This document shows positions 1 to 47,586 of a stretch of DNA of 64,000 nt, one piece after another (position 1 is the stretch's first letter; the number at the start of each line of letters is the position of its first letter). The stretch is from Paramoeba atlantica. Taxonomy: Eukaryota > Protista > Discosea. The stretch is taken from the NCBI GenBank assembly GCA_977017575.1, contig CDRNVI010000190.1:1-64000 (forward strand), in the 5' to 3' direction. Both the position numbers and the translations under genes were made by a program. The notes below the pieces were generated by a model that saw only the letters and a program-made list of their open reading frames with translations, had not been told where the DNA came from and did not search any database.

Positions 1-1122
1 GTGCCTTCATTCTCACTCTCAGAACTTGAAACAAACATACAAACACCAGATTTTTTTGTTCACCAACACAAACAATTCATTGAACAAAATGTGAAAAAAG
101 GAAGAATCCCTTCTTGGGTCAGACCTCTTCTTTGGTTTGTGTTACTTGGTTCTCTCTCTTCTGGAGATCAAATTTCGAGTGGTTGGTCTTCTCCTCTCCC
201 TGATGATCTCTCTCTTTTGATTGACATTGATGGATATCAGATTCTTTCTTTAAAGAGAAAGGGAAAAGAAAAGGGAAAAGGAGAAGAACAGAATGATGGA
301 GAAGAAGAAGAGAAAGATGAAGAAGAGAAAAAGAGATTCAAGGTAGCGAAGAGGTCAGGTGAACAAGCGTCGAGAGATATCCCTCGATTAGGTCTTACCG
401 AAAGAGAGATACAAGAAAGATGGGACAAGATAATGAAAGAGGTTTTTGTTTGTTATGCTTTTTTTGATCCTGAGGTTGGTTATGTAGATGGTGTATCACT
501 TGTTGCAAGAGATTTCTTTCGAGGTCTTGCCCCCTCTCCTTCCTCTCTTTCTCTCTCTTCTCCTTCTCCATCTCCATCTCCATCTTCTTCTCAACTAACA
601 AAAAAAGATTTCATGATTCTTGCTTTCGCAAAATTGTTTCATTCTCTTGGAACAAGAAATCTTTTCATTGTATCTGCCAAGTTTTCAGTGTTCTTGGTCC
701 TTCAAGCAATTGTCCCAAAATTTTGTCCAAAGTTTCAAAAATGGATAGATTTAGAGTTTGATGATGGTTCTGGGAATATCGTGATATCTTTTCTCTTTCG
801 AAAGGTTGTTCTTTTCTTTGAATCAACACCCATTAGTCCTTTTCTTTGGGATCGAGTATTATTTTATGGAATTTCAGAACTTTTTGTGGCGGTTGTTGCT
901 CTTCTTCAGCTCTGGGAGAACCCTCCACCTCCTGGTCCAGATTTTGGATCCAGTGCTCTTAATATTTTTGTACGAACTGTCGAAAAAGAGCGTCTCTTGA
1001 AAGTGATGGATAAGATGCAAGAACAAGTGAGAAATTATTTATTTGAAGAATGGCCTCAGCTTTTCTATGTGGGTTGTTCCTCTGGTGTTAATGTCAAAGG
1101 TGCAAAAGGAAACAAAAATTGA
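1..1122 (+). CDS. TBC (Rab-GAP) domain protein, probably 5'-truncated by the window edge; glutamine finger replaced
   Basis: TBC motifs RPLLW (RxxxW), ASRDIPR (IxxDxxR arginine finger), YAFFDPEVGYVDG (YxQG position reads YVDG) and FLWDRVLFYG...LFVAVVALLQL. No ATG at the start of the ORF. Confidence 0.7.
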   Translation: MPSFSLSELETNIQTPDFFVHQHKQFIEQNVKKGRIPSWVRPLLWFVLLGSLSSGDQISSGWSSPLPDDLSLLIDIDGYQILSLKRKGKEKGKGEEQNDGEEEEKDEEEKKRFKVAKRSGEQASRDIPRLGLTEREIQERWDKIMKEVFVCYAFFDPEVGYVDGVSLVARDFFRGLAPSPSSLSLSSPSPSPSPSSSQLTKKDFMILAFAKLFHSLGTRNLFIVSAKFSVFLVLQAIVPKFCPKFQKWIDLEFDDGSGNIVISFLFRKVVLFFESTPISPFLWDRVLFYGISELFVAVVALLQLWENPPPPGPDFGSSALNIFVRTVEKERLLKVMDKMQEQVRNYLFEEWPQLFYVGCSSGVNVKGAKGNKN

Positions 1123-1522
1123 AATAAAATTTGTTTTCTGCGGCAGGAGTTTTTTTTTAAAATCACCACAAACAAACGCTCACACTCTCTGGTGGGGAGG
1201 GGGTTGATGGAAGAGGAACCCATGATTCAACCAAGTTAGAAAAACGAAAAATGTCAGGTCGAAGCCATCACAAATGATGAAAGTCCAAAAATTGTTGCCG
1301 AGCGAAAAAGAAAAAAAATTTCTCTCCTTGAGACCAAATAAAACAATCCTTTTTCATCGAAAAATTCAGTTTAAATGTGACTTTATGAAAAGTCGTAACG
1401 ATTCGAAAAGTCCTAAAATCCAAATAAGGGAAAAATCCGGAAAATCAGAAAAGTGTTATTTTTATTTTTTTGGTCCCGTTCTCTTCTCTCCTTTCTTTCT
1501 CCTGTTTTTCTCCCTCTTTTCC

Positions 1523-3526
1523 ATGAAACCTTTTTTCTTTCTTTCTCTCCTTTCTTTGTTCCTTCTTGGAGCATCATCACAATCAATCCCTTCTCCTGAT
1601 CGTTCTCTCTTTGATTTCATCTCTGCTGGATCCACCCTTGCTTTTCCGATCGTCTCCGAATGGCTGTATTCGTACACCCTCTTACAACCCAAAAAAACAG
1701 TTGTCTATGAAGGTGGAGGATCAGGGAGTGGGATTCGAAGAACTCTCGAAAATTCAATCGATTTTGGGTTGACAGAGAGATTCCCTTCTGATGAAGATTA
1801 CGAACTGTTTCCGAACCTTATTACAATTCCGTACGTTGGAGCGACAGTGATTCTCATCTTTAATAATCCAACCATTGAAGAATATCTGAACTCTCTTCCC
1901 ATCAACGAAACAATAGGGACAAGAAACTACACCCCACAAAATTATCTCATTCTTGGAAGAGAAACAGTTGCTGATATTTATGGAGGAGAGATCAACTATT
2001 GGGATGATCCGCGAATTCTTGCAGACAACACCCCTGGGCTTGGTGAAGTAGGAGGAGGTTCTCTCTTTGAACATATCCCAATTTTTCGTTTTACTCGAAG
2101 AGACGCTTCAGGGACAACAACTCTCTTTATGGACGCATTGGGTTCCTTTTCAGAGTCTTTTGGAGATGATTATCCTGCAAGTTCTCGATTCCCTTCGAAT
2201 CTCACGTCTCTCCCTGACTTTTTCACTGCGTTTGGGAATGATGGACTTGCCCACGCATCTTTCAATTTGGAATATTCAATTGCGTACATTAGCTCTCCTT
2301 CCAACCTCAACATGGAGTTTGCTCTTATTCCCAATTTTCGAGGACAATTGACTTCTCCTTTGAATGACAACCCTGCTTTGACAGGACTTCTCGATAATGA
2401 AGTTCCAGTCGTCAACGAGAAGAATGAAATCGATGGAGTTGACTTAGACAGAGATCAAATCTACCCAATTTTTGGATTTTCTTATCTTTTAATCAACCCA
2501 GAGATTGCTGTGAGTTGCGAGGGAAGGAGAGAGGCTTTTCTCTTTTTGAGATATTCACTGTCCGATTCGAAAATCAGGCAGATTGGTGAATCGCTTGTTT
2601 TTTTATTACCTTCTCAGAACTACGATGAAGAAGCTCTTAAGATCTTGGAAACTGTTACTTGTGGAGAAGGAATTTTCCTTCTTGATCCCGTGATGGAAGA
2701 GATTCACGAATCAGCTGCTTTCCCTGTTTTCCTCAGTCTGGCCATGTTCTTTCTTGTTGTGACGATCACCAGCTCAGCTTACTTAATGTTCACTCAGCCT
2801 GGAACTCGAAAGGCTTCTATCCTTCCTTTTTCTGTTCTTCTTCTCTGTGGCGGGTTTCTTTGTTATTTTGTTCAGATATTTTGGTATCTTGTTCCAGATG
2901 AAGACTACATTTGTCAGCTTCGCCAATGGCTGACAGCTTTTGGGTTGACATTTGTAGTTATAGCAATGGCCCTTCGACAGTGGGTCTTACTCCAAATCTT
3001 TTTGAGACGAAAACACTTTACTTCTTATACTACATCTATTCGAGATGCTCTAATCTTCATGTGCATCGTGATACTTATTCAACTCATAATCATGCTCTGT
3101 TGGACAGAAATCGATCCGTACAGTTCCTCAAAGAGATCAGAGGACAATTTGAATCAAATTTTTTCTTGGGAATGTCGGTCAGAAGATTCGTGGATTTGGT
3201 TTGGCCTCGAGATTGCTTTTTTCGCCATAATGATCTCCTTTATGATGATCACTGTCTATTTTGTCTGGAAATTTTCTGCTGATCTACCTGGACACAAGTA
3301 CACTGTTATGTCCATCTATAACTTGGTCATGATCTTCATTGTCTTGGCGATTTTATACGCTACAACAATTGAAGGAGATGACGAAGTTGCCATCACAGCG
3401 ATGGTGTCCTTAACTGTTGTGACTCTTTCCTCAGTCGGTTTAAATTTCCAATTGACTGCTGCTACTCAAGCAACAGCGACTGCCAGATCCAGATCGCAGA
3501 GTGGGGTAGACAAAGGTTCCAAATGA
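1523..3526 (+). CDS. Class C (7tm_3, GABA-B/Grl-like) GPCR with N-terminal PstS-like phosphate-binding domain; intronless
   Basis: Signal peptide MKPFFFLSLLSLFLLGASSQ. PstS motifs AGSTL, YEGGGSGSG, IDFGLTE, RRDASGTT and SIAYIS. Seven hydrophobic segments from ~2711, with the class C signature P-x4-C-x2-R-x-W (PDEDYICQLRQW). Confidence 0.85.
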   Translation: MKPFFFLSLLSLFLLGASSQSIPSPDRSLFDFISAGSTLAFPIVSEWLYSYTLLQPKKTVVYEGGGSGSGIRRTLENSIDFGLTERFPSDEDYELFPNLITIPYVGATVILIFNNPTIEEYLNSLPINETIGTRNYTPQNYLILGRETVADIYGGEINYWDDPRILADNTPGLGEVGGGSLFEHIPIFRFTRRDASGTTTLFMDALGSFSESFGDDYPASSRFPSNLTSLPDFFTAFGNDGLAHASFNLEYSIAYISSPSNLNMEFALIPNFRGQLTSPLNDNPALTGLLDNEVPVVNEKNEIDGVDLDRDQIYPIFGFSYLLINPEIAVSCEGRREAFLFLRYSLSDSKIRQIGESLVFLLPSQNYDEEALKILETVTCGEGIFLLDPVMEEIHESAAFPVFLSLAMFFLVVTITSSAYLMFTQPGTRKASILPFSVLLLCGGFLCYFVQIFWYLVPDEDYICQLRQWLTAFGLTFVVIAMALRQWVLLQIFLRRKHFTSYTTSIRDALIFMCIVILIQLIIMLCWTEIDPYSSSKRSEDNLNQIFSWECRSEDSWIWFGLEIAFFAIMISFMMITVYFVWKFSADLPGHKYTVMSIYNLVMIFIVLAILYATTIEGDDEVAITAMVSLTVVTLSSVGLNFQLTAATQATATARSRSQSGVDKGSK

Positions 3527-3547
3527 AAAGAAGATTGTGAATGTTTT

Positions 3548-6500
3548 TTAATCCCAATATTTAATCAAACCATCCCACCCACAAGTCGCAATCCGAGATG
3601 GCTCAATGGGATGCCAAGCACACCCAATACAAACACCATCGTGTGCTTTCAACTTTTTCAAAATTCTGTTGAAAAAAGAGGGGGGGGGGTGTAAGAAGGC
3701 CACATAAGCAAATTAATTAATTGTTTTTTGTGTTTTTCTCAAAAATAAAAAAAGAAAAAAGAAAAAAAAAACCTCGTTGTTCGCCAATCCCATACGTAAA
3801 CTTGTCCTCCAGATGACCCAGAAATAACATACGCACAATCAGGGGAAAAGTTTACTTGACATGCATATCCTGTCCCAATTTTTGTTAATACAAACAAACC
3901 AAAATCTCTTGGAAACAATAATCCCCTCCCCCAAAAAAAAATCCAAAAAGCAGGTGCATCAAAAATAAAAGTAGAAGTTTTTCAGATCAAAACCAACCTG
4001 CCGTGAGATGGCCAGTGAATCGTTTTTTCTTGTTCAAACTAAATCGATTGTTCGCACTAAAAAAAAAAAAAATAAAAAAATTAACAAAAATTAAAAACTT
4101 GATTCAAAAATAATAAAAAAAAGAAATAGAAAAAGAAAAAGAAAAAGAAAAAGAAAAGAGCCAAACCTGTAAATCAAAACCTGATTATCCAAAGATTGAG
4201 CAGCAAACCACTTCTCCTTTGGATGAATTGCAACAGAAGGCATCGAATGCATATGGGGTTCTTGGATCACTTTAATATCAACAGGAATTCCATACTCCCA
4301 AATCCGGATGCTTTTGTCATCGGAAGTAGAGATAAATCTCCTTCCTTCATCGACAAAAAGGACTGTATTTACTGCCTGAAAAAGGAGAGAGAAATTTTTT
4401 GTTATTACATCAAAATTATCTTTTTTCTTTTTTGTGGTTCTTTTGTTTTTCTTTTTGTTGTATTTTTCTGAAAAAAACTCACAAAATACAAATATAAACA
4501 CAATATTTGAAAAGAGAAAGAGAGTAAAAGAAAAGAAAAATGTACCATCAAATGGCGATCATATTCCTGAACAACCTCTTTTGTTCGAGTATCCCACTAT
4601 TTTTCAAAAATGAATCCATTTTGTCTAAAGAAGAGAGAAAAGAAAAAAGAAAATAACTTGAATAATCTTATTATTTGAACAAGCAGCAAGAAATTCATTA
4701 TTATTTACAGGATAAAATTTCACACAAAAAGGGATTTTCTTATTGGTGAATCGATTGATACATTGTCCTGTTTCTGTATCCCACAACTAAAAAAAAAAAT
4801 CAGCAAACAAAAAAGAAATCTTCATTGTTTAAAAAAAAAAGAGATATCAAAATAAAATAAAAGAAAAAAGAAAAAACAGAAAGAAAAAAAAGAAAAAGAA
4901 AAAAGAAAAAAAAAAAACCTTAACAAATCGATCATAACTCGCACTCAAAAACTGTTTGCCATCATTCGAAAAATCAATGGAGCGAACAGCTCCCCCATGT
5001 CCAAGATATGTTCTCGCACATTGTCTTTTGTTGTAAACATCCCAAATCTATCATTTTTTTTTTGTGTCAATAAAAGATATTCATTTTTTTTTGATTTTTC
5101 TTTCTTTTTTTTTTTGATTTAAAATGATTTTGTTTTTTTTGGTTTTTTTGGTTTTTTTGGTTTTTTTGTTTTTTGTTTTTTGTTTTTTGTTTTTTGGTTT
5201 TTTTGTTTTTTTGTTTTTTTGTTTTTTTGTTTTTTTGTTTTTTGTTTTTGTATTGTTTTTTGTTTCTGTTTTTGTTTCATTTTGTTTTTAGGTTTATAAA
5301 AATTGTTTTGGAGATATAAAATCAGCATTAAAAAGGAACAAACCTTAATCTTAGCATCCATCCCAGCAGAAAGAATCAAATGACCACTCTTCGGGAAAAA
5401 CTGAATCGCAGAAACTCCCTTAGTGTGCCCAGACCATGTATGAATTGGTTTCTTTGGCAAGTAACATTCATGTTCCATATCAATTCGTGAAGTAAGTTCT
5501 GTGAATAAAATAAATTTGTTAAGTATTTGAAGAAAACCAGAAAAAAAAATGGAAAAAGAAATACAAAATCTCAACACCAAAAAAAATTCTCATTCAAATA
5601 AAGAAAAATTGAAAATAAAAAATAAAAATTAAACATCCCAAGAAAAAAAATAGAGAACAAAAAAAAAGAAGAACCTTTTGGAACATCAACAAAAGAGCGG
5701 CCAAGATAATCTTTCAATTCCTTTCCATGAAAGACAGTTTTTTCCTCTACATCTTCTGTTTCTTCTTCTTCTTTCTTTTCTTCAGGTTTCTTTTTATACT
5801 TTTCAACCATTTCTTCGGTCTGTCATATTCAGTTAGAAAATTTTCAAAAATCCTCTCTCCTTCTCTTCTATTCTCCAAAAAGAAAAACCAAAAAAAGAAA
5901 GAAAGATAAAAAAAAGATTAAAGAAAAGATAAACAAAAAGATAAACAAAAGAAAAATAAAACAAAACAACAAAAAAGAAAGAAAGAAAGAAAACAACAAA
6001 AAGAAAAACAAACCGGCTCAGGAACTTTATAAGCCTCCAACTCAGGATGAGGTTTCCAAGGACCCTGAAAACTATCCCCCGCAGGATCTTCTCTCTCTCC
6101 CTTTCTCTTTCTCTTTCTCTTTCCTTTCTCTCCCATTTCTTCTCCTTTTTCTTGGCCAGGTAAAAGAGAAGTGACTCGAGGATTGTCGTTTTGGATGAGA
6201 GTTGTTCCTCTTGAGGATGCTGATAATGCAGGATCTTCAGCAGTTCCTGTTAGAAAGAAAGTAAATGATTTTGTTTTTGTCAAAGATCAAAAAGGTGAAA
6301 AGAAAGAAAAGAAAATCAGAAAAAAAAGAAGAAAGGAATAAAAAAAAACAAAGGAATAAAAATCTAAAAAAAAAATAAAAAAAAAATAAAATAAAAAAAA
6401 ACCAGTATTCTGAAAAGAATGATACTGTTGATGAAAAGCAAATTCATCAATATGATCTCGTTCAACAAAACCATTCCAACAATTTTTAGTAAATTCATCT

Positions 6501-43588: not shown

Positions 43589-46500
43589 ATGCGATCGTGT
43601 TACTTGCTCGCTCTTTTTTCCCTCGTTTCTCTTGTTGCGGGAGATCCTGGTTCTGCCGCGATTGGGGCTGCAGAAAATATTTTTGAGGTCATCAATGGAC
43701 GAGGTCAGTTTGCAGAAATTCAAAGGATTATGTCAGAACAGGTTTGTGTTGTAGTTGCACCCCACAATTATTTGTGGTTTTTTCTTCTTTTTTCGTTCAC
43801 CAATTAATTTTTCTTTTTTTAGATTGTTTCCAACTTAAACATTGATGGAAATGTGGAAGCCGCTTCTGTTGGTTCCTCACTTGATGCTCTCATCCGCCCA
43901 CAAAGGGACGCTTTGTTTTCGATGCGAGATTGCATCGTCGCACAACAAACAGATACAAGGGGAGAGGACATCGCAACCGCCTCTTACCACGGGGTTTACA
44001 GTGATGAAGGTTGGGATCGAACCAAAGAAGAAAACGCGGTCGATTGTGCGTGTCTCGCTCCAGTCTGGAATCAATCCGTTACGGGAACCACAGTTTTACA
44101 AGCCTTTTTGGGTTCCAGTGGGTTCATTGAAGGATATTTTACGGATTTGGCATTGAATACAGCAGAGTCTTCGATTGGCGAAACCTCTGATGCTCGCACA
44201 AACCCGAATTTCGTTTCTTCAACAACTTTTCAAAAACAGGTCATCATCATGTTGGATTTCTCGAACCTTCCCGAGGAGGATGGGGTCGATTTTCTCGCTG
44301 CGATGAAACTTGGGAGTCATGCTGTGATTCAAGGTTTGTCGGATTTGGACTCCATTCAAGTCGTCACTTCGGTTCCTGGATTCGATAAGGGATTTGATTG
44401 TGGTGGAGAACAGCTTCTTCGTGGGACTGAGAGTAACAAGAAGGCCATCATGGATTACGTTGATACTCTGACCTCCCCTGGGCCAAATGATCCCTCTCAT
44501 CTTACTCCACTTGAAATCTTTTCGAATGCCTTCAACTTGACCCCGATTGCTGGATCTGCGCCCTCTTGTCAGCCATTATTTTTGTATGTTTCTGCCAATC
44601 AGTTCGCGAAAGGGAACGTGAGAGAAATTACGGTTTTGAAGAATTTGGTGCTAGGATCTTTACTTTTGCGATTCAGTCTGCAACCGATCCGGAAGGGTAC
44701 TTGGGAGGAGGTTCGATGTACAATCTGGCTTGTGAAAATGATGGATCGTGGTACAACGTTCAAAACGATGATGATATGCCAAACAAAATGATTCAGTATC
44801 AAATGCTTGTTCAACGTTCACGTACAATCACTGAGCCAACTTGGCGGGTGAATCTCCCTTCTTATGGAGGGTTGCACGGTCTTGTGATTTCGGGTGCATT
44901 ACCTGTTTTTCTTCCATCTGAAAAAACAGTCAAAAGTACTTTGGTTGGTGTTGTTGTGGTTGAATTTACTTTTGCTGATATCCAAGAATACCTTTTGTCT
45001 CTGAAGGTCGGTTTATCTTTTGCGTTTTTGACGACTTGGAATGCTGACTTGTTGATCCACCCAATTTATCGTGACCCAGAAGTTGTTTCAAATCTTCCAC
45101 TTTATTATGATGTTACCCATGTCGAAAGTTCTGAGAACTTTGTGAACGAGGTTCGCGGGCTTCTTGTGAGCCAGAGATCTGGAGAAAAGTCAGTGCTTGT
45201 AGATCGACCACTTCCAAGAGGAGACACTGGAACAGTGGGTTACTCAACAACATCAGTGAACACTACCTTTTTCTGGTCCCAATTACAATCTCTTCCATTT
45301 ACAGTGGTTCTTGCTTTCACAGAGTCACGATTACGTTCTCCTTTCTTTACTGCAAACGACGAAACTGATCCTGTCATGACAACGAAAATCGGTCGTCTCT
45401 TGGATCAACCTGATGTTTTTGATTACGTTCCTGATGACTACTTTGATTATTTGACAGATCATCCAGGCCGTGTTCAATTTAACTATGGATATGTTCATTG
45501 CAGGGACACAGTTAGGAGTTATGACAACATATTAGCAAAGGCAGCTCTTTCTGAAATGTCTGGAGGAGTTTTAAATGACAACAATATTTTGGAACAACCT
45601 GATACAATTCGAGCGATCCAAACCTATTTGAACAATTTCAACAGACCCTTTAACGAGAATCCGGGTTTCCTTGCAGATTTCAGATCGAACTCTCGAATTG
45701 GTAGTCAATTTTTCAAGAAATGGCGAGAGGATAGTGCGTTGGGTAATGATGTTGATGGTATGTTTCGGTTTGCTGGATTTTATACGGATAGTTCCGTGAC
45801 TTTTCCTGGTCTTGTGTATCTTCCTTCGACTCTGTTTTCCTTTATTTCACAACGACCTTGGTATCAAAAGGCGGAAAGTAATCCTCGTGTGACTGCCATT
45901 TCGAGTCCCTATTCCGATCTTAACCATGGACATAAAGTTTCGACTGTCTCTCAAGCAATCCTTGAAGATCCTAATGTACCATTGGAGGACATTTTTATTT
46001 TTGGTGTGATTGGTGTTGATTTCCCTTACCCAGCTCTCCATCAAGGATTCGTTGATGCCACTGGTTGTGCTTATGATTGGGAACAGGCAATGAATGATGG
46101 TACTCCGATGTGTTACTTAATGGATAATTCTGGCTTTCTAGTTATTACACCTGACTTTTTAGCCCCCGGTTTTAATACCTATGATAAAACCAATAGTGAT
46201 ACTCTTCCAGTGGGAGTTGCTGAACCTTATTTGACTCTCGACTTATTATCCAAAGGAATTATGACTCGTAATGTCTTTACCAATTTCCGTGGAGAAACAA
46301 CAACACTGATTTACGATGATGAGGGGAATGTTGAGGGAGTCAATATCTCTCCAATCGATATTCCACAAACAGTTCCACAATTTGAAGTGAATGAAACCGC
46401 CCTCGAGGAAGCTGGTGGTTTCGTTTCAGGAATTCTCGAGAAAGTGGACGGTTATTGTACTTCTGGAACATACACCATCACAAAAGTTACCGGAACAAAT

Positions 46501-47586
46501 TCCTTTTTGATCTATGTTGAAGATTATTCCTTGGATAACAACGAGGATTGTCGAGTTTTTGACTTGGATTCAACCGAAAACATTACGTTTGGGATTTGTG
46601 AGGAAGCAGGATATAATTATTCCCAGTTTTACCCAGTTTGTCCAAATTCTGATGAAAGACAAAGCACAACTGAGAGGAACCGACCAGAGGATGCTCAATG
46701 CGATTTGGTGCCTCCAAAAGAGGCAGATTTTGTTGCTTGGGGAGATCCAGCTGCGATTGCGATGGTGACTGTGGCTTCTGTGTTGATATTTGTGACTTTG
46801 ATTATGTGGGGAATTATTCTAAAGTACCGTGGTACCCCTGTGATTATGATGGCCTCCCCTGTCTTTGTTTATCTTCAGTTTTTTGGTTTTATTTTGGGTT
46901 ATTTTAATATTTACTTGTGGACTGGAGAACCAACTGATGTGCAGTGTGGTTTGCGGCCTTGGATAGCTTCAATTGCTTTTGTTTTAATTGTTGGACCCAT
47001 GTTTGCTAAAACATATCGTATTTGGAAACTCTTCTCTGGAAAAGGATTCTTTGCAAAGAAGATCTCTGACACCACTGTCTTATTTTATGTTGGTTTGATG
47101 TTGGTCGTTCCATTGATTATTTGTATTATTTGGAGTGCCTATGAGATGCCTGAGCCAACGTACAATGATGACGATTTCGATGATGATAAGAGAACTTATC
47201 GATGTGATGGTGATAATTGCCGAATTTTCGAAGGTATTATGATTGGTTATTGTGGTTGTTTATTGGCATTGGGGTCTTTCTTTGCTTTCCGTTCTCGAAA
47301 AGGATCTTCTTATTTTAATGAAGCGAGATTCATTGGTGTTTCCATCTATATGATCTCTTTTTGTGGGGTTGTTGGTGTCGTTCTGACATATGTCCTTCTC
47401 GGCCTTCCGATTGCGTACTATCTCGTGTTTTGTGTTTCTGTGATGTTTGCGATTTTCTTCACAACTCTGGTTGTTTATTACCCCAAAATCAGAGTTTGTC
47501 TTTTCAAACCAGCAAAAAATGTCTACAAGAGTTCTACTCGAAATGGGAGTACAAATACACCAACCGCAAGTATGATGGACGCTTGA
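43589..47586 (+). CDS. Class C GPCR with alpha2delta/CACHD1-like ectodomain (VWA + two dCache); intron 43742-43822; one-base frameshift at ~44609-44614
   Basis: Signal peptide MRSCYLLALFSLVSLVAG. VWA KQVIIMLDFS...CQPLFLYV...RIFTFAI. Cache motifs GLVISGALPVF..LVGVVVVE, FAFLTTWNADLLIHP and QRPWY..SSPYSD..GVIGVD. 7TM motifs PVIMMASPVF, CGLRPW, FAKTYRIWKLF and FNEARFIGVSIY. Confidence 0.85.

What the first reader, a model, noticed from the sequence alone, without database searches (positions are those of the whole stretch)
1523..3526. Candidate phosphate-sensing GPCR: PstS domain fused to a class C 7TM
Seen: signal peptide, then a PstS-like domain, then 7 TMs with class C motifs, all without introns. 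Established: E. coli PstS binds phosphate through T10, S38, D56, R135, D137, S139, G140 and T141. The equivalent positions here read GSTL, GSG, LTE (D>E) and RRDASGT, so almost all are retained. Class C receptors normally use a Venus-flytrap (type I periplasmic-binding) domain, whereas PstS is type II. Inference: a bacterial high-affinity phosphate-binding module has been rewired as a G-protein-coupled sensor of inorganic phosphate or a related oxyanion.
Basis: partly seen in the sequence, partly recalled or inferred. Interest (0 to 1): 0.8.

Follow-up and report, generated by a model that had tools for sequence, protein, structure and literature searches.

The report
Amoeba receptor with phosphate-binding ectodomain
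An intronless, transcribed gene of a marine amoeba-type protist joins a bacterial-style phosphate-binding (PstS) domain, with its phosphate pocket intact, to a class C G-protein-coupled-receptor membrane domain; it is a plausible but untested cell-surface phosphate sensor, and this type of protein has been listed in databases and in one 2012 survey.

Summary
Window 1523-3526 (+) is one uninterrupted 667-codon gene. It encodes a signal peptide, a PstS-type domain, a short Cys-containing stalk and a class C 7TM domain. Pfam gives PBP_like_2 at E 6e-15 and 7tm_3 at E 2e-27. The AlphaFold model of the ectodomain (pLDDT 89.7) matches E. coli PstS (TM-score 0.88); the 48 best PDB matches are all phosphate-binding proteins. 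The 7TM model (pLDDT 90.2) matches GABA-B2, CaSR and mGlu receptors. All eight phosphate-contacting side-chain positions of E. coli PstS are kept, with D56 changed to E. RNA contigs cover the gene without splice joints.

The architecture is not new. About 49 of the best 150 cluster representatives span the domain junction. Named members come from Amoebozoa (Stygamoeba, Sappinia, Mayorella, Flabellula) and Paulinella. ESM Atlas holds three such clusters, and Krishnan et al. 2012 listed one in a chytrid. The eukaryotic PstS domains separate from bacterial-type PstS in a tree, so this is an old eukaryotic module rather than a recent transfer.

No functional study was found. Phosphate binding and G-protein coupling remain inference. 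The scan's index held no earlier PstS-GPCR note on other DNA.

The parts
1523..1579 (+). Start codon and predicted signal peptide (aa 1-19)
   Evidence: Hydrophobic N-terminus straight after the Met. The in-frame stretch upstream (1274-1522) is low-complexity and has no counterpart in the homologues.
1580..2575 (+). PstS-type (type II periplasmic-binding-protein) ectodomain, aa 20-351
   Evidence: Pfam PBP_like_2 E 6.4e-15. TIGR00975 PstS E 3.5e-30. AF2 model pLDDT 89.7. Foldseek versus E. coli PstS gives E 1e-27 and TMt 0.88, and the top 48 hits are all phosphate-binding proteins. Three N-x-S/T sites at N128, N135 and N226.
1634..1639 (+). T38-L39, equivalent to PstS T10-F11 (phosphate contacts)
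   Evidence: HMMER alignment to 1ixh; column counts.
1721..1723 (+). S67, equivalent to PstS S38
   Evidence: S in 16 of 18 fused and 29 of 30 stand-alone PstS.
1775..1777 (+). E85, equivalent to PstS D56 (Asp changed to Glu)
   Evidence: D in 30 of 30 stand-alone PstS; E only in fused receptors (5 of 18).
2096..2116 (+). R192-R-D194-A-S196-G197-T198, equivalent to PstS R135, D137, S139, G140, T141
2576..2713 (+). Stalk/linker (aa 352-397) with family-invariant Cys380. Its likely partner Cys332 lies at 2516-2518, inside the PstS part.
   Evidence: C332 and C380 are invariant in 23 family members. Short strands in the model lie ahead of TM1. No NCD3G cysteine-rich domain is found.
2714..3442 (+). 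Class C 7TM domain (aa 398-640), TM1-TM7
   Evidence: Pfam 7tm_3 E 2.3e-27. phmmer versus GABA-B2 E 5e-11. Seven hydrophobic helices. AF2 pLDDT 90.2. The Foldseek top 50 are all class C receptors, with GABA-B2 at TMq 0.77. Cys464 (TM3 top) and Cys551 (ECL2) are invariant and align with the GABA-B2 pair.
3443..3526 (+). Short cytoplasmic tail (27 aa) and stop codon
   Evidence: RNA contig X5 #30 runs on to 3636, which indicates a 3' UTR.

Best explanation
This is a functional, transcribed gene for a cell-surface receptor of the class C GPCR type. Its ligand-binding module is a PstS-type phosphate clamp instead of the usual type I Venus flytrap. The most likely mechanism is as follows. Extracellular orthophosphate binds in the cleft between the two PstS lobes, held by T38, the L39 backbone, S67, E85, R192, D194, S196, G197 and T198. 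Hinge closure of the clamp is passed through a short, probably disulfide-pinned stalk (C332-C380) that packs against the ECL2 hairpin. This changes the state of the GABA-B-like 7TM domain, probably within a dimer, and the 7TM domain activates one of the organism's heterotrimeric G proteins. The result would report phosphate availability, for nutrient status or for finding prey. Shown here: domain identities, both folds, retention of the pocket, topology, intactness, transcription and family breadth. Inferred: the ligand, the coupling of closure to the 7TM domain, dimerisation, G-protein coupling and the physiological role.
For: Both domains score above the Pfam cut-offs. PstS is the best NCBIfam and PDB sequence match. 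The ectodomain model superposes on phosphate-bound E. coli PstS with TMt 0.88, and the 48 best PDB matches are all phosphate-binding proteins. All 8 side-chain contact positions are compatible with PstS, while the ectodomain as a whole is only about 22% identical to E. coli PstS. The same positions are kept in most of 18 fused relatives at 20-39% overall identity, which indicates selection on the pocket. The 7TM model matches solved class C receptors, and the TM3-ECL2 cysteines are invariant. The positive-inside loops fit an N-out topology. Several G-alpha genes are present in the genome. RNA contigs lie on the gene. Full-length ORFs are conserved in relatives at 46-50% identity. For precedent, class C receptors already mediate responses to phosphate species: Dictyostelium GrlD for polyphosphate (PMC6724513) and human CaSR for inorganic phosphate (PMC6795806).
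Against: There is no binding or signalling data for any member, and no functional paper was found. The PstS equivalog score is below NCBI's cut-off (105 vs 205 bits), so this is a diverged PstS. D56, invariant in 30 of 30 stand-alone PstS, is Glu here; that residue helps PstS tell phosphate from sulfate, so affinity or selectivity may differ. Several family members have lost most pocket residues, so the family is not uniformly phosphate-binding. A homodimer of the ectodomain got no support from the complex predictor, which counts neither way. Between two near-identical strains there are 8 non-synonymous and 4 synonymous differences, too few to show constraint.
Confidence: 0.6

Rival explanations
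1. The receptor is built as described but has a different ligand: another tetrahedral oxyanion or phosphorylated compound (arsenate, sulfate, pyrophosphate or a polyphosphate end, an organophosphate). The D56E change and eukaryote-specific loop insertions would have retuned the pocket.
For: E at the D56 position occurs only in fused receptors, never in 30 stand-alone PstS. There are inserts with lower pLDDT around aa 129-139 and 290-300. The score is below the PstS equivalog cut-off. Some relatives have clearly changed pockets. In Dictyostelium the phosphate species known to be sensed by a class C receptor is polyphosphate.
Against: Every other contact residue is retained. Glu keeps the carboxylate that accepts the phosphate proton. 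All close structural matches are orthophosphate binders.
Confidence: 0.2
2. It is a membrane-tethered phosphate-capture protein or transceptor rather than a G-protein-coupled sensor. The 7TM part would serve mainly as an anchor or partner for a phosphate transporter, by analogy with bacterial substrate-binding proteins that are lipid-anchored or fused to their transporter.
For: The cytoplasmic tail is very short (27 aa) and the loops are short. G-protein coupling is not shown. PstS domains also occur in other eukaryotic multi-domain proteins that lack 7tm_3 (Thecamonas, Chromosphaera).
Against: 7tm_3 is kept in 23 of 23 relatives, together with the class C cysteine pair and TM3/TM6 motifs. A mere anchor would not need this. 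The 7TM fold best matches a G-protein-bound GABA-B2 structure. G-alpha genes are present.
Confidence: 0.1
3. It is an artefact or dead gene: a chimeric assembly of bacterial PstS DNA with a eukaryotic GPCR, or a decaying pseudogene.
For: A near-identical public contig (L002) has one extra C in a C/A run at about window 1690, which shifts the frame of its N-terminus. The strain comparison gives 8 non-synonymous to 4 synonymous changes.
Against: The same junction is present in contigs of four runs and in L002. Three runs keep the window's frame at 1690. The same fusion is found in dozens of distant eukaryotic sequences. The gene shares the local base composition and is transcribed.
Confidence: 0.02

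Closest known systems
PBP_like_2 + 7tm_3 receptors of other eukaryotes (Spizellomyces punctatus SPPG_06488 in Krishnan et al. 2012; transcripts of Stygamoeba, Sappinia, Mayorella, Flabellula, Paulinella; ESM Atlas clusters)
   Same: They have the same two-domain architecture and the same invariant stalk cysteines, and most have the same phosphate-pocket residues.
   Different: Identity is only 21-46% apart from one near-identical strain. None has a tested function. This copy has Glu at the D56 position.
E. coli PstS (periplasmic phosphate-binding protein of the PstSCAB importer; PDB 1ixh/2abh)
   Same: The fold matches (TMt 0.88) and all phosphate-contacting side-chain positions are kept.
   Different: Identity is about 22%. 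D56 is Glu. There are eukaryote-type inserts with N-glycosylation sites. It is covalently joined to a 7TM domain instead of docking on an ABC transporter. It scores below the equivalog cut-off.
GABA-B receptor (GB2 subunit), class C GPCR
   Same: It is the best sequence and fold match of the 7TM part. The TM3-ECL2 cysteines are shared, and the binding domain joins TM1 by a short stalk with no cysteine-rich domain.
   Different: GABA-B uses a type I Venus flytrap (ANF_receptor) and works as an obligate heterodimer with long coiled-coil tails. Here the ectodomain is type II and the tail is 27 aa.
Dictyostelium GrlD (class C receptor needed for polyphosphate binding and response; PMC6724513)
   Same: It is an amoebozoan class C receptor linked to sensing of an extracellular phosphate species.
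   Different: Its ligand is long-chain polyphosphate. No PstS domain has been reported for the Grl ectodomains, which are described as BMP-type, ANF-type or unassigned. GrlD itself was not compared here.
Human calcium-sensing receptor as phosphate sensor (PMC6795806)
   Same: It is a class C GPCR whose activity responds directly to extracellular inorganic phosphate.
   Different: Phosphate acts there as a modulator at anion sites of a type I flytrap whose main ligand is Ca2+. Here the whole ectodomain is a dedicated phosphate clamp.
Ionotropic glutamate receptor ligand-binding domain (own knowledge, not tested here)
   Same: It shows that a type II periplasmic-binding fold has been recruited as the sensor of a eukaryotic membrane receptor.
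   Different: The output module is an ion channel rather than a 7TM domain, and the ligand is an amino acid.

Membership tests
Class C (glutamate-family) GPCR | 7TM domain matching the 7tm_3 profile above the curated cut-off | tested here: met
   96.7 bits against a 33.5-bit cut-off, aa 398-640.
Class C (glutamate-family) GPCR | Seven helices with the fold of solved class C 7TM domains | tested here: met
   AF2 pLDDT 90.2. The Foldseek top 50 are all class C receptors, with GABA-B2 at TMq 0.77. Hydropathy gives 7 TM helices.
Class C (glutamate-family) GPCR | Conserved cysteine pair between the top of TM3 and ECL2 | tested here: met
   C464 and C551 are invariant in 36 sequences and align with the GABA-B2 cysteines.
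Class C (glutamate-family) GPCR | Large extracellular ligand-binding domain of the type I Venus-flytrap kind (ANF_receptor) | tested here: not met
   The ectodomain is PBP_like_2/PstS, a type II fold. Non-metazoan class C receptors with other binding folds are documented, so this feature defines the metazoan subfamilies, not the 7TM class.
Class C (glutamate-family) GPCR | Cysteine-rich domain (NCD3G) between flytrap and 7TM | tested here: not met
   There is no NCD3G hit. It is also absent in GABA-B receptors and in all non-metazoan members.
Class C (glutamate-family) GPCR | Constitutive dimer | tested here: inconclusive
   The ectodomain homodimer prediction gave no answer.
Class C (glutamate-family) GPCR | Activation of heterotrimeric G proteins | not testable with these tools
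   All that could be shown is that G-alpha genes exist in the genome.
PstS phosphate-binding protein family | Profile match (Pfam PBP_like_2; NCBIfam PstS equivalog TIGR00975) | tested here: inconclusive
   PBP_like_2 scores 56 bits against a 27-bit cut-off, so that test is met. TIGR00975 is the best hit but scores 105 bits against a 205-bit cut-off, so that test is not met.
PstS phosphate-binding protein family | Two-lobed type II fold of PstS | tested here: met
   TMt 0.88 and E 1e-27 to E. coli PstS; the top 48 hits are all phosphate binders.
PstS phosphate-binding protein family | Phosphate-contacting residues T10, S38, D56, R135, D137, S139, G140, T141 | tested here: met
   Seven are identical and D56 is Glu.
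PstS phosphate-binding protein family | High-affinity, selective binding of orthophosphate | not testable with these tools
   This needs ITC or thermal shift on the purified ectodomain.
PstS phosphate-binding protein family | Works with a PstCAB ABC importer | not tested
   It is fused to a 7TM domain instead. PstC, PstA and PstB were not searched for in this genome.

The most novel reading that the evidence does not exclude
These PstS-7TM proteins are the first dedicated extracellular orthophosphate receptors of eukaryotes. They would form an ancient family (Amoebozoa, chytrids, green algae, Rhizaria) in which closure of a type II phosphate clamp drives a class C 7TM domain and G-protein signalling. 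Members with altered pockets would have moved on to other anions.
Probability: 0.4. Interest if true: 0.75.

Novelty: new member of a known kind. Interest (0 to 1): 0.5.

Why it matters
How eukaryotic cells sense phosphate outside the cell is poorly understood. The known routes are transporter-based or intracellular (SPX/inositol pyrophosphate), or involve side effects on receptors for other ligands such as CaSR. A receptor whose whole ectodomain is a PstS clamp with an intact pocket is a concrete candidate that is easy to test. The ectodomain is soluble and well modelled, and there are four decades of PstS mutagenesis to guide controls. It would also show whether a type II binding fold can drive class C 7TM activation, which bears on how modular class C receptors are. 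The family could supply parts for phosphate biosensors. The limit on novelty is that the architecture is already visible in public domain databases and in a 2012 survey; only the functional reading is new.

Tried and rejected
1. The ectodomain homodimer prediction gave "no answer". It is not evidence either way.
2. The search for related loci with the ectodomain alignment failed because no stretch was conserved enough. The genome search among relatives is impossible because the genome has no relatives in the prokaryote collection. The bacterial side of the PstS tree is therefore unnamed cluster representatives plus one Xanthobacteraceae MAG, and no donor lineage can be named.
3. The 7TM tree did not resolve whether all PstS-fused receptors share one fusion event. 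The genome's own ANF and Bmp paralogues fall among long-branched fused members, so a single origin is neither shown nor excluded.
4. The synonymous/non-synonymous count against the 99%-identical strain has too few changes to be useful (4 vs 8). Comparison with the 50% orthologue would be saturated and was not attempted.
5. Chimeric assembly or contamination was rejected (see rivals).
6. The scan note of an OpuAC-type class C receptor in this genome was checked with a Pfam OpuAC search of the whole genome. Nothing was found at E <= 0.001.
7. Literature searches for PstS with 7tm_3, GPCR or class C found only catalogue mentions.
8. The organism could not be named outright. See the full report for the indirect inference.

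Full report
**What is there.** The window is AT-rich eukaryotic nuclear DNA (GC 27-43% per 2 kb). Its genes include RabGAP-TBC, RING/Sel1, Sas10/Utp3, FYVE and ADH types. One open frame runs from 1274 to 3526 on the + strand. The Met at 1523 is followed by a hydrophobic stretch typical of a signal peptide. The 83 in-frame codons upstream are low-complexity and have no counterpart in the homologues.

**Domain identity.**
- Pfam finds PBP_like_2 at aa 34-348 (E 6.4e-15, 56 bits, cut-off 27) and 7tm_3 at aa 398-640 (E 2.3e-27, 96.7 bits, cut-off 33.5).
- NCBIfam's best model is the PstS equivalog TIGR00975 (E 3.5e-30). At 105 bits it is well below the 205-bit equivalog cut-off, so this is a diverged PstS.
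- Against PDB sequences the N-terminal half matches M. tuberculosis PstS-1 and E. coli PstS (E about 1e-11). The C-terminal half matches GABA-B2 (E 5e-11), then mGlu and CaSR.

**Folds.**
- An AlphaFold2 model of aa 20-392, built on a 48-row alignment, has mean pLDDT 89.7 and pTM 0.89.
- Foldseek against the PDB puts E. coli PstS structures first (E 1e-27, TM-score 0.88 normalised to PstS). The 48 best matches are all phosphate-binding proteins, including DING proteins and cyanophage PstS.
- A model of aa 376-660 has pLDDT 90.2, seven long helices and a beta-hairpin in ECL2. Its 50 best PDB matches are all class C receptors, led by G-protein-bound GABA-B2 at TMq 0.77.

**The phosphate pocket.** The HMMER alignment to E. 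coli PstS and column counts on my alignments give these pairs:

| E. coli PstS | This protein |
|---|---|
| T10 | T38 |
| F11 (backbone contact) | L39 |
| S38 | S67 |
| D56 | E85 |
| R135 | R192 |
| D137 | D194 |
| S139 | S196 |
| G140 | G197 |
| T141 | T198 |

- Overall identity to E. coli PstS is about 22%, so keeping all eight side-chain positions is not a by-product of general similarity.
- D56 is Asp in 30 of 30 stand-alone PstS in my alignment. It is Glu in 5 of 18 fused receptors. The substitution is therefore peculiar to the receptor family and may tune affinity or selectivity.

**Receptor features.**
- Hydropathy gives a signal peptide and seven TM segments, at aa 398-416, 432-450, 466-490, 505-527, 564-582, 595-613 and 622-640. 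Basic residues lie in the predicted cytoplasmic loops, and the tail is 27 aa.
- Cys464 at the top of TM3 and Cys551 in ECL2 are invariant in 36 sequences and align with the class C disulfide pair of GABA-B2. The TM3 C-x-x-R-x-W, the TM4 CW-x-x-DP and the TM6 K-Y-x-x-M-S-x-Y-N stretches also align.
- There is no cysteine-rich NCD3G domain. The PstS domain joins TM1 through about 45 residues carrying a family-specific T-C-x-G motif.
- Cys332 and Cys380 are invariant in all 23 family members aligned. I infer a disulfide pinning the stalk to the PstS body.

**Is the gene real and used?**
- A public contig from another sample (L002) is 99.4% identical over 2.8 kb.
- Contigs of four sequencing runs cover the gene.
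- Run X5 carries two joints with CT..AC ends, which read GT..AG on the minus strand, in the neighbouring minus-strand genes at 3868-3997 and 5498-5675. X5 therefore holds spliced RNA.
- X5 contigs lie on 2235-2386, 2425-2589, 2624-2815, 3070-3358 and 3429-3636 with 0-1 mismatches and no joints. This fits a low-level, intronless transcript with a 3' UTR of about 110 nt. DNA carry-over in that run cannot be excluded.
- L002 has one extra C in a C/A run near window 1690, which explains its shorter gene call. Three other runs keep the window's frame there.

**Family and distribution.**
- An exhaustive HMMER search of 1.84 billion cluster representatives gave 1660 hits at E <= 0.001. By my count from the table, 49 of the best 150 are single alignments that span the PstS/7TM junction.
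- Of 23 full-length members aligned, 23 carry 7tm_3 and 22 carry PBP_like_2.
- Named members are transcripts of the amoebozoans Stygamoeba regulata, Sappinia pedata, Mayorella sp. and Flabellula baltica, a Paulinella micropora model, and a protein annotated in a Schistocerca gregaria assembly.
- ESM Atlas holds three clusters auto-named for this architecture, with 51, 52 and 68 members. The commonest recorded taxa are Discosea and Chlorophyta.
- Krishnan et al. 2012 listed PBP_like_2 on a class C receptor of the chytrid Spizellomyces (SPPG_06488). They listed it beside LysR_substrate, OpuAC and SBP_bac_1 ectodomains in other fungi (PMC3251606).
- De Mendoza et al. 2014 note that OpuAC and Bmp configurations are conserved across lineages.
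- A type II binding domain on a class C 7TM is therefore an established theme outside animals. I found no paper that tests or even discusses the function of the PstS version.

**Origin of the PstS module.**
- I built an IQ-TREE tree of 50 PstS domains. A split with 97% bootstrap and 89% SH-aLRT support separates 29 stand-alone, bacterial-type PstS from a set holding all 18 fused ectodomains, PstS domains of multi-PstS proteins of Chromosphaera perkinsii and Thecamonas trahens, and one short unnamed sequence.
- This fits an old eukaryotic PstS lineage rather than a recent transfer into this organism. The root and the donor are unknown.
- The 7TM tree does not resolve whether the fusion happened once.

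**Genomic context.**
- The genome is 45.7 Mb in 248 contigs. It has at least eight 7tm_3 loci but only this one PBP_like_2 match.
- The other class C loci carry an ANF_receptor ectodomain, two Bmp ectodomains, or no recognised ectodomain. One more lies in this window at 44566-47586.
- Several G-alpha genes are present.
- The assembly also holds tandem arrays of an HSP90 gene. That gene is 99% identical to a transcript labelled MMETSP0151 and about 80% identical to Perkinsela HSP90. From memory, Perkinsela-type kinetoplastids are the endosymbionts of Paramoeba/Neoparamoeba.
- I therefore infer that the assembly is such an amoeba together with its endosymbiont. The window, with its spliceosomal introns and GPCR genes, would be host DNA. 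This is inference, not a tool result.

**Mechanism and confidence.**
- Best reading (0.6): a class C-type receptor that senses extracellular orthophosphate by PstS clamp closure, passed through a disulfide-pinned stalk and ECL2 to a GABA-B-like 7TM domain and on to G proteins.
- Rival readings: a retuned ligand (0.2), a tethered capture protein or transceptor (0.1), and an artefact or pseudogene (0.02).
- Six of the 23 aligned relatives retain only one to three of the eight pocket positions (P0010, P0018, P0024, P0034, P0037, P0112), and P0048 retains four. The family seems to have diversified in ligand, and phosphate looks like the commonest state. That scan read the S38 equivalent at S69 rather than S67, so each count may be off by one; the corrected columns are.

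**Verdict.** The architecture is a new member of an already catalogued, uncharacterised kind. It is worth a bench test because the ectodomain assay is simple and the question of eukaryotic extracellular phosphate sensing is open.

Noticed in passing
window 44566-47586 (+): This is a second class C receptor gene in the window. 7tm_3 scores E 3e-53 at aa 724-974 of a 1006-aa ORF, behind an ectodomain of about 720 aa with no Pfam hit at E <= 0.001. Another scan note reads that ectodomain as VWA-dCache.
   Followed up: partly
G000 contigs C12, C48, C88, C90 (e.g. L012): There are more than 25 tandem HSP90 copies spaced about 2587 bp apart. They are 99% identical to an MMETSP0151 transcript and about 80% identical to Perkinsela HSP90. 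The assembly seems to include a kinetoplastid endosymbiont beside the host.
   Followed up: partly
L002:6050 region, equivalent to window ~1690: A near-identical public contig has one extra C in a C/A homopolymer. This shifts the N-terminal frame of its copy of the gene, whose gene call is shortened to 629 aa. Three sequencing runs keep the window's frame. It is probably an assembly error but could be a strain allele.
   Followed up: partly
P0048 / P0168 (XP_049849891, XP_049849890): A family member is annotated as an uncharacterised protein of the locust Schistocerca gregaria, on a 426-kb contig. All other named members are protists, so that contig may belong to a protist living in or on the locust.
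   Followed up: no
P0012 (Chromosphaera perkinsii, 2386 aa) and P0063 (Thecamonas trahens, 1757 aa): These are giant eukaryotic proteins with three or four PstS-like stretches and no junction-spanning match to the receptor. Their PstS domains group with those of the receptors.
   Followed up: partly
A1 members P0010, P0018, P0024, P0034, P0037, P0112 (and P0048): In the site scan, six members of the PstS-7TM family retain only 1-3 of the 8 phosphate-pocket positions, and P0048 retains 4. All keep the fold-level match and the stalk cysteines. They are likely to have other ligands. That scan misplaced the S38 column by two residues, so the counts may be off by one.
   Followed up: partly
window 201-400 and 4401-4600: These are purine-rich low-complexity stretches with a 10- to 30-fold excess of contig depth in all DNA runs, and with many loose ends and false joints. 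They are dispersed simple repeats.
   Followed up: no
window 3868-3997 and 5498-5675 (- strand): RNA contigs show two spliced introns (128 and 176 nt, GT..AG on the minus strand) in the neighbouring WD40-like gene or genes.
   Followed up: no
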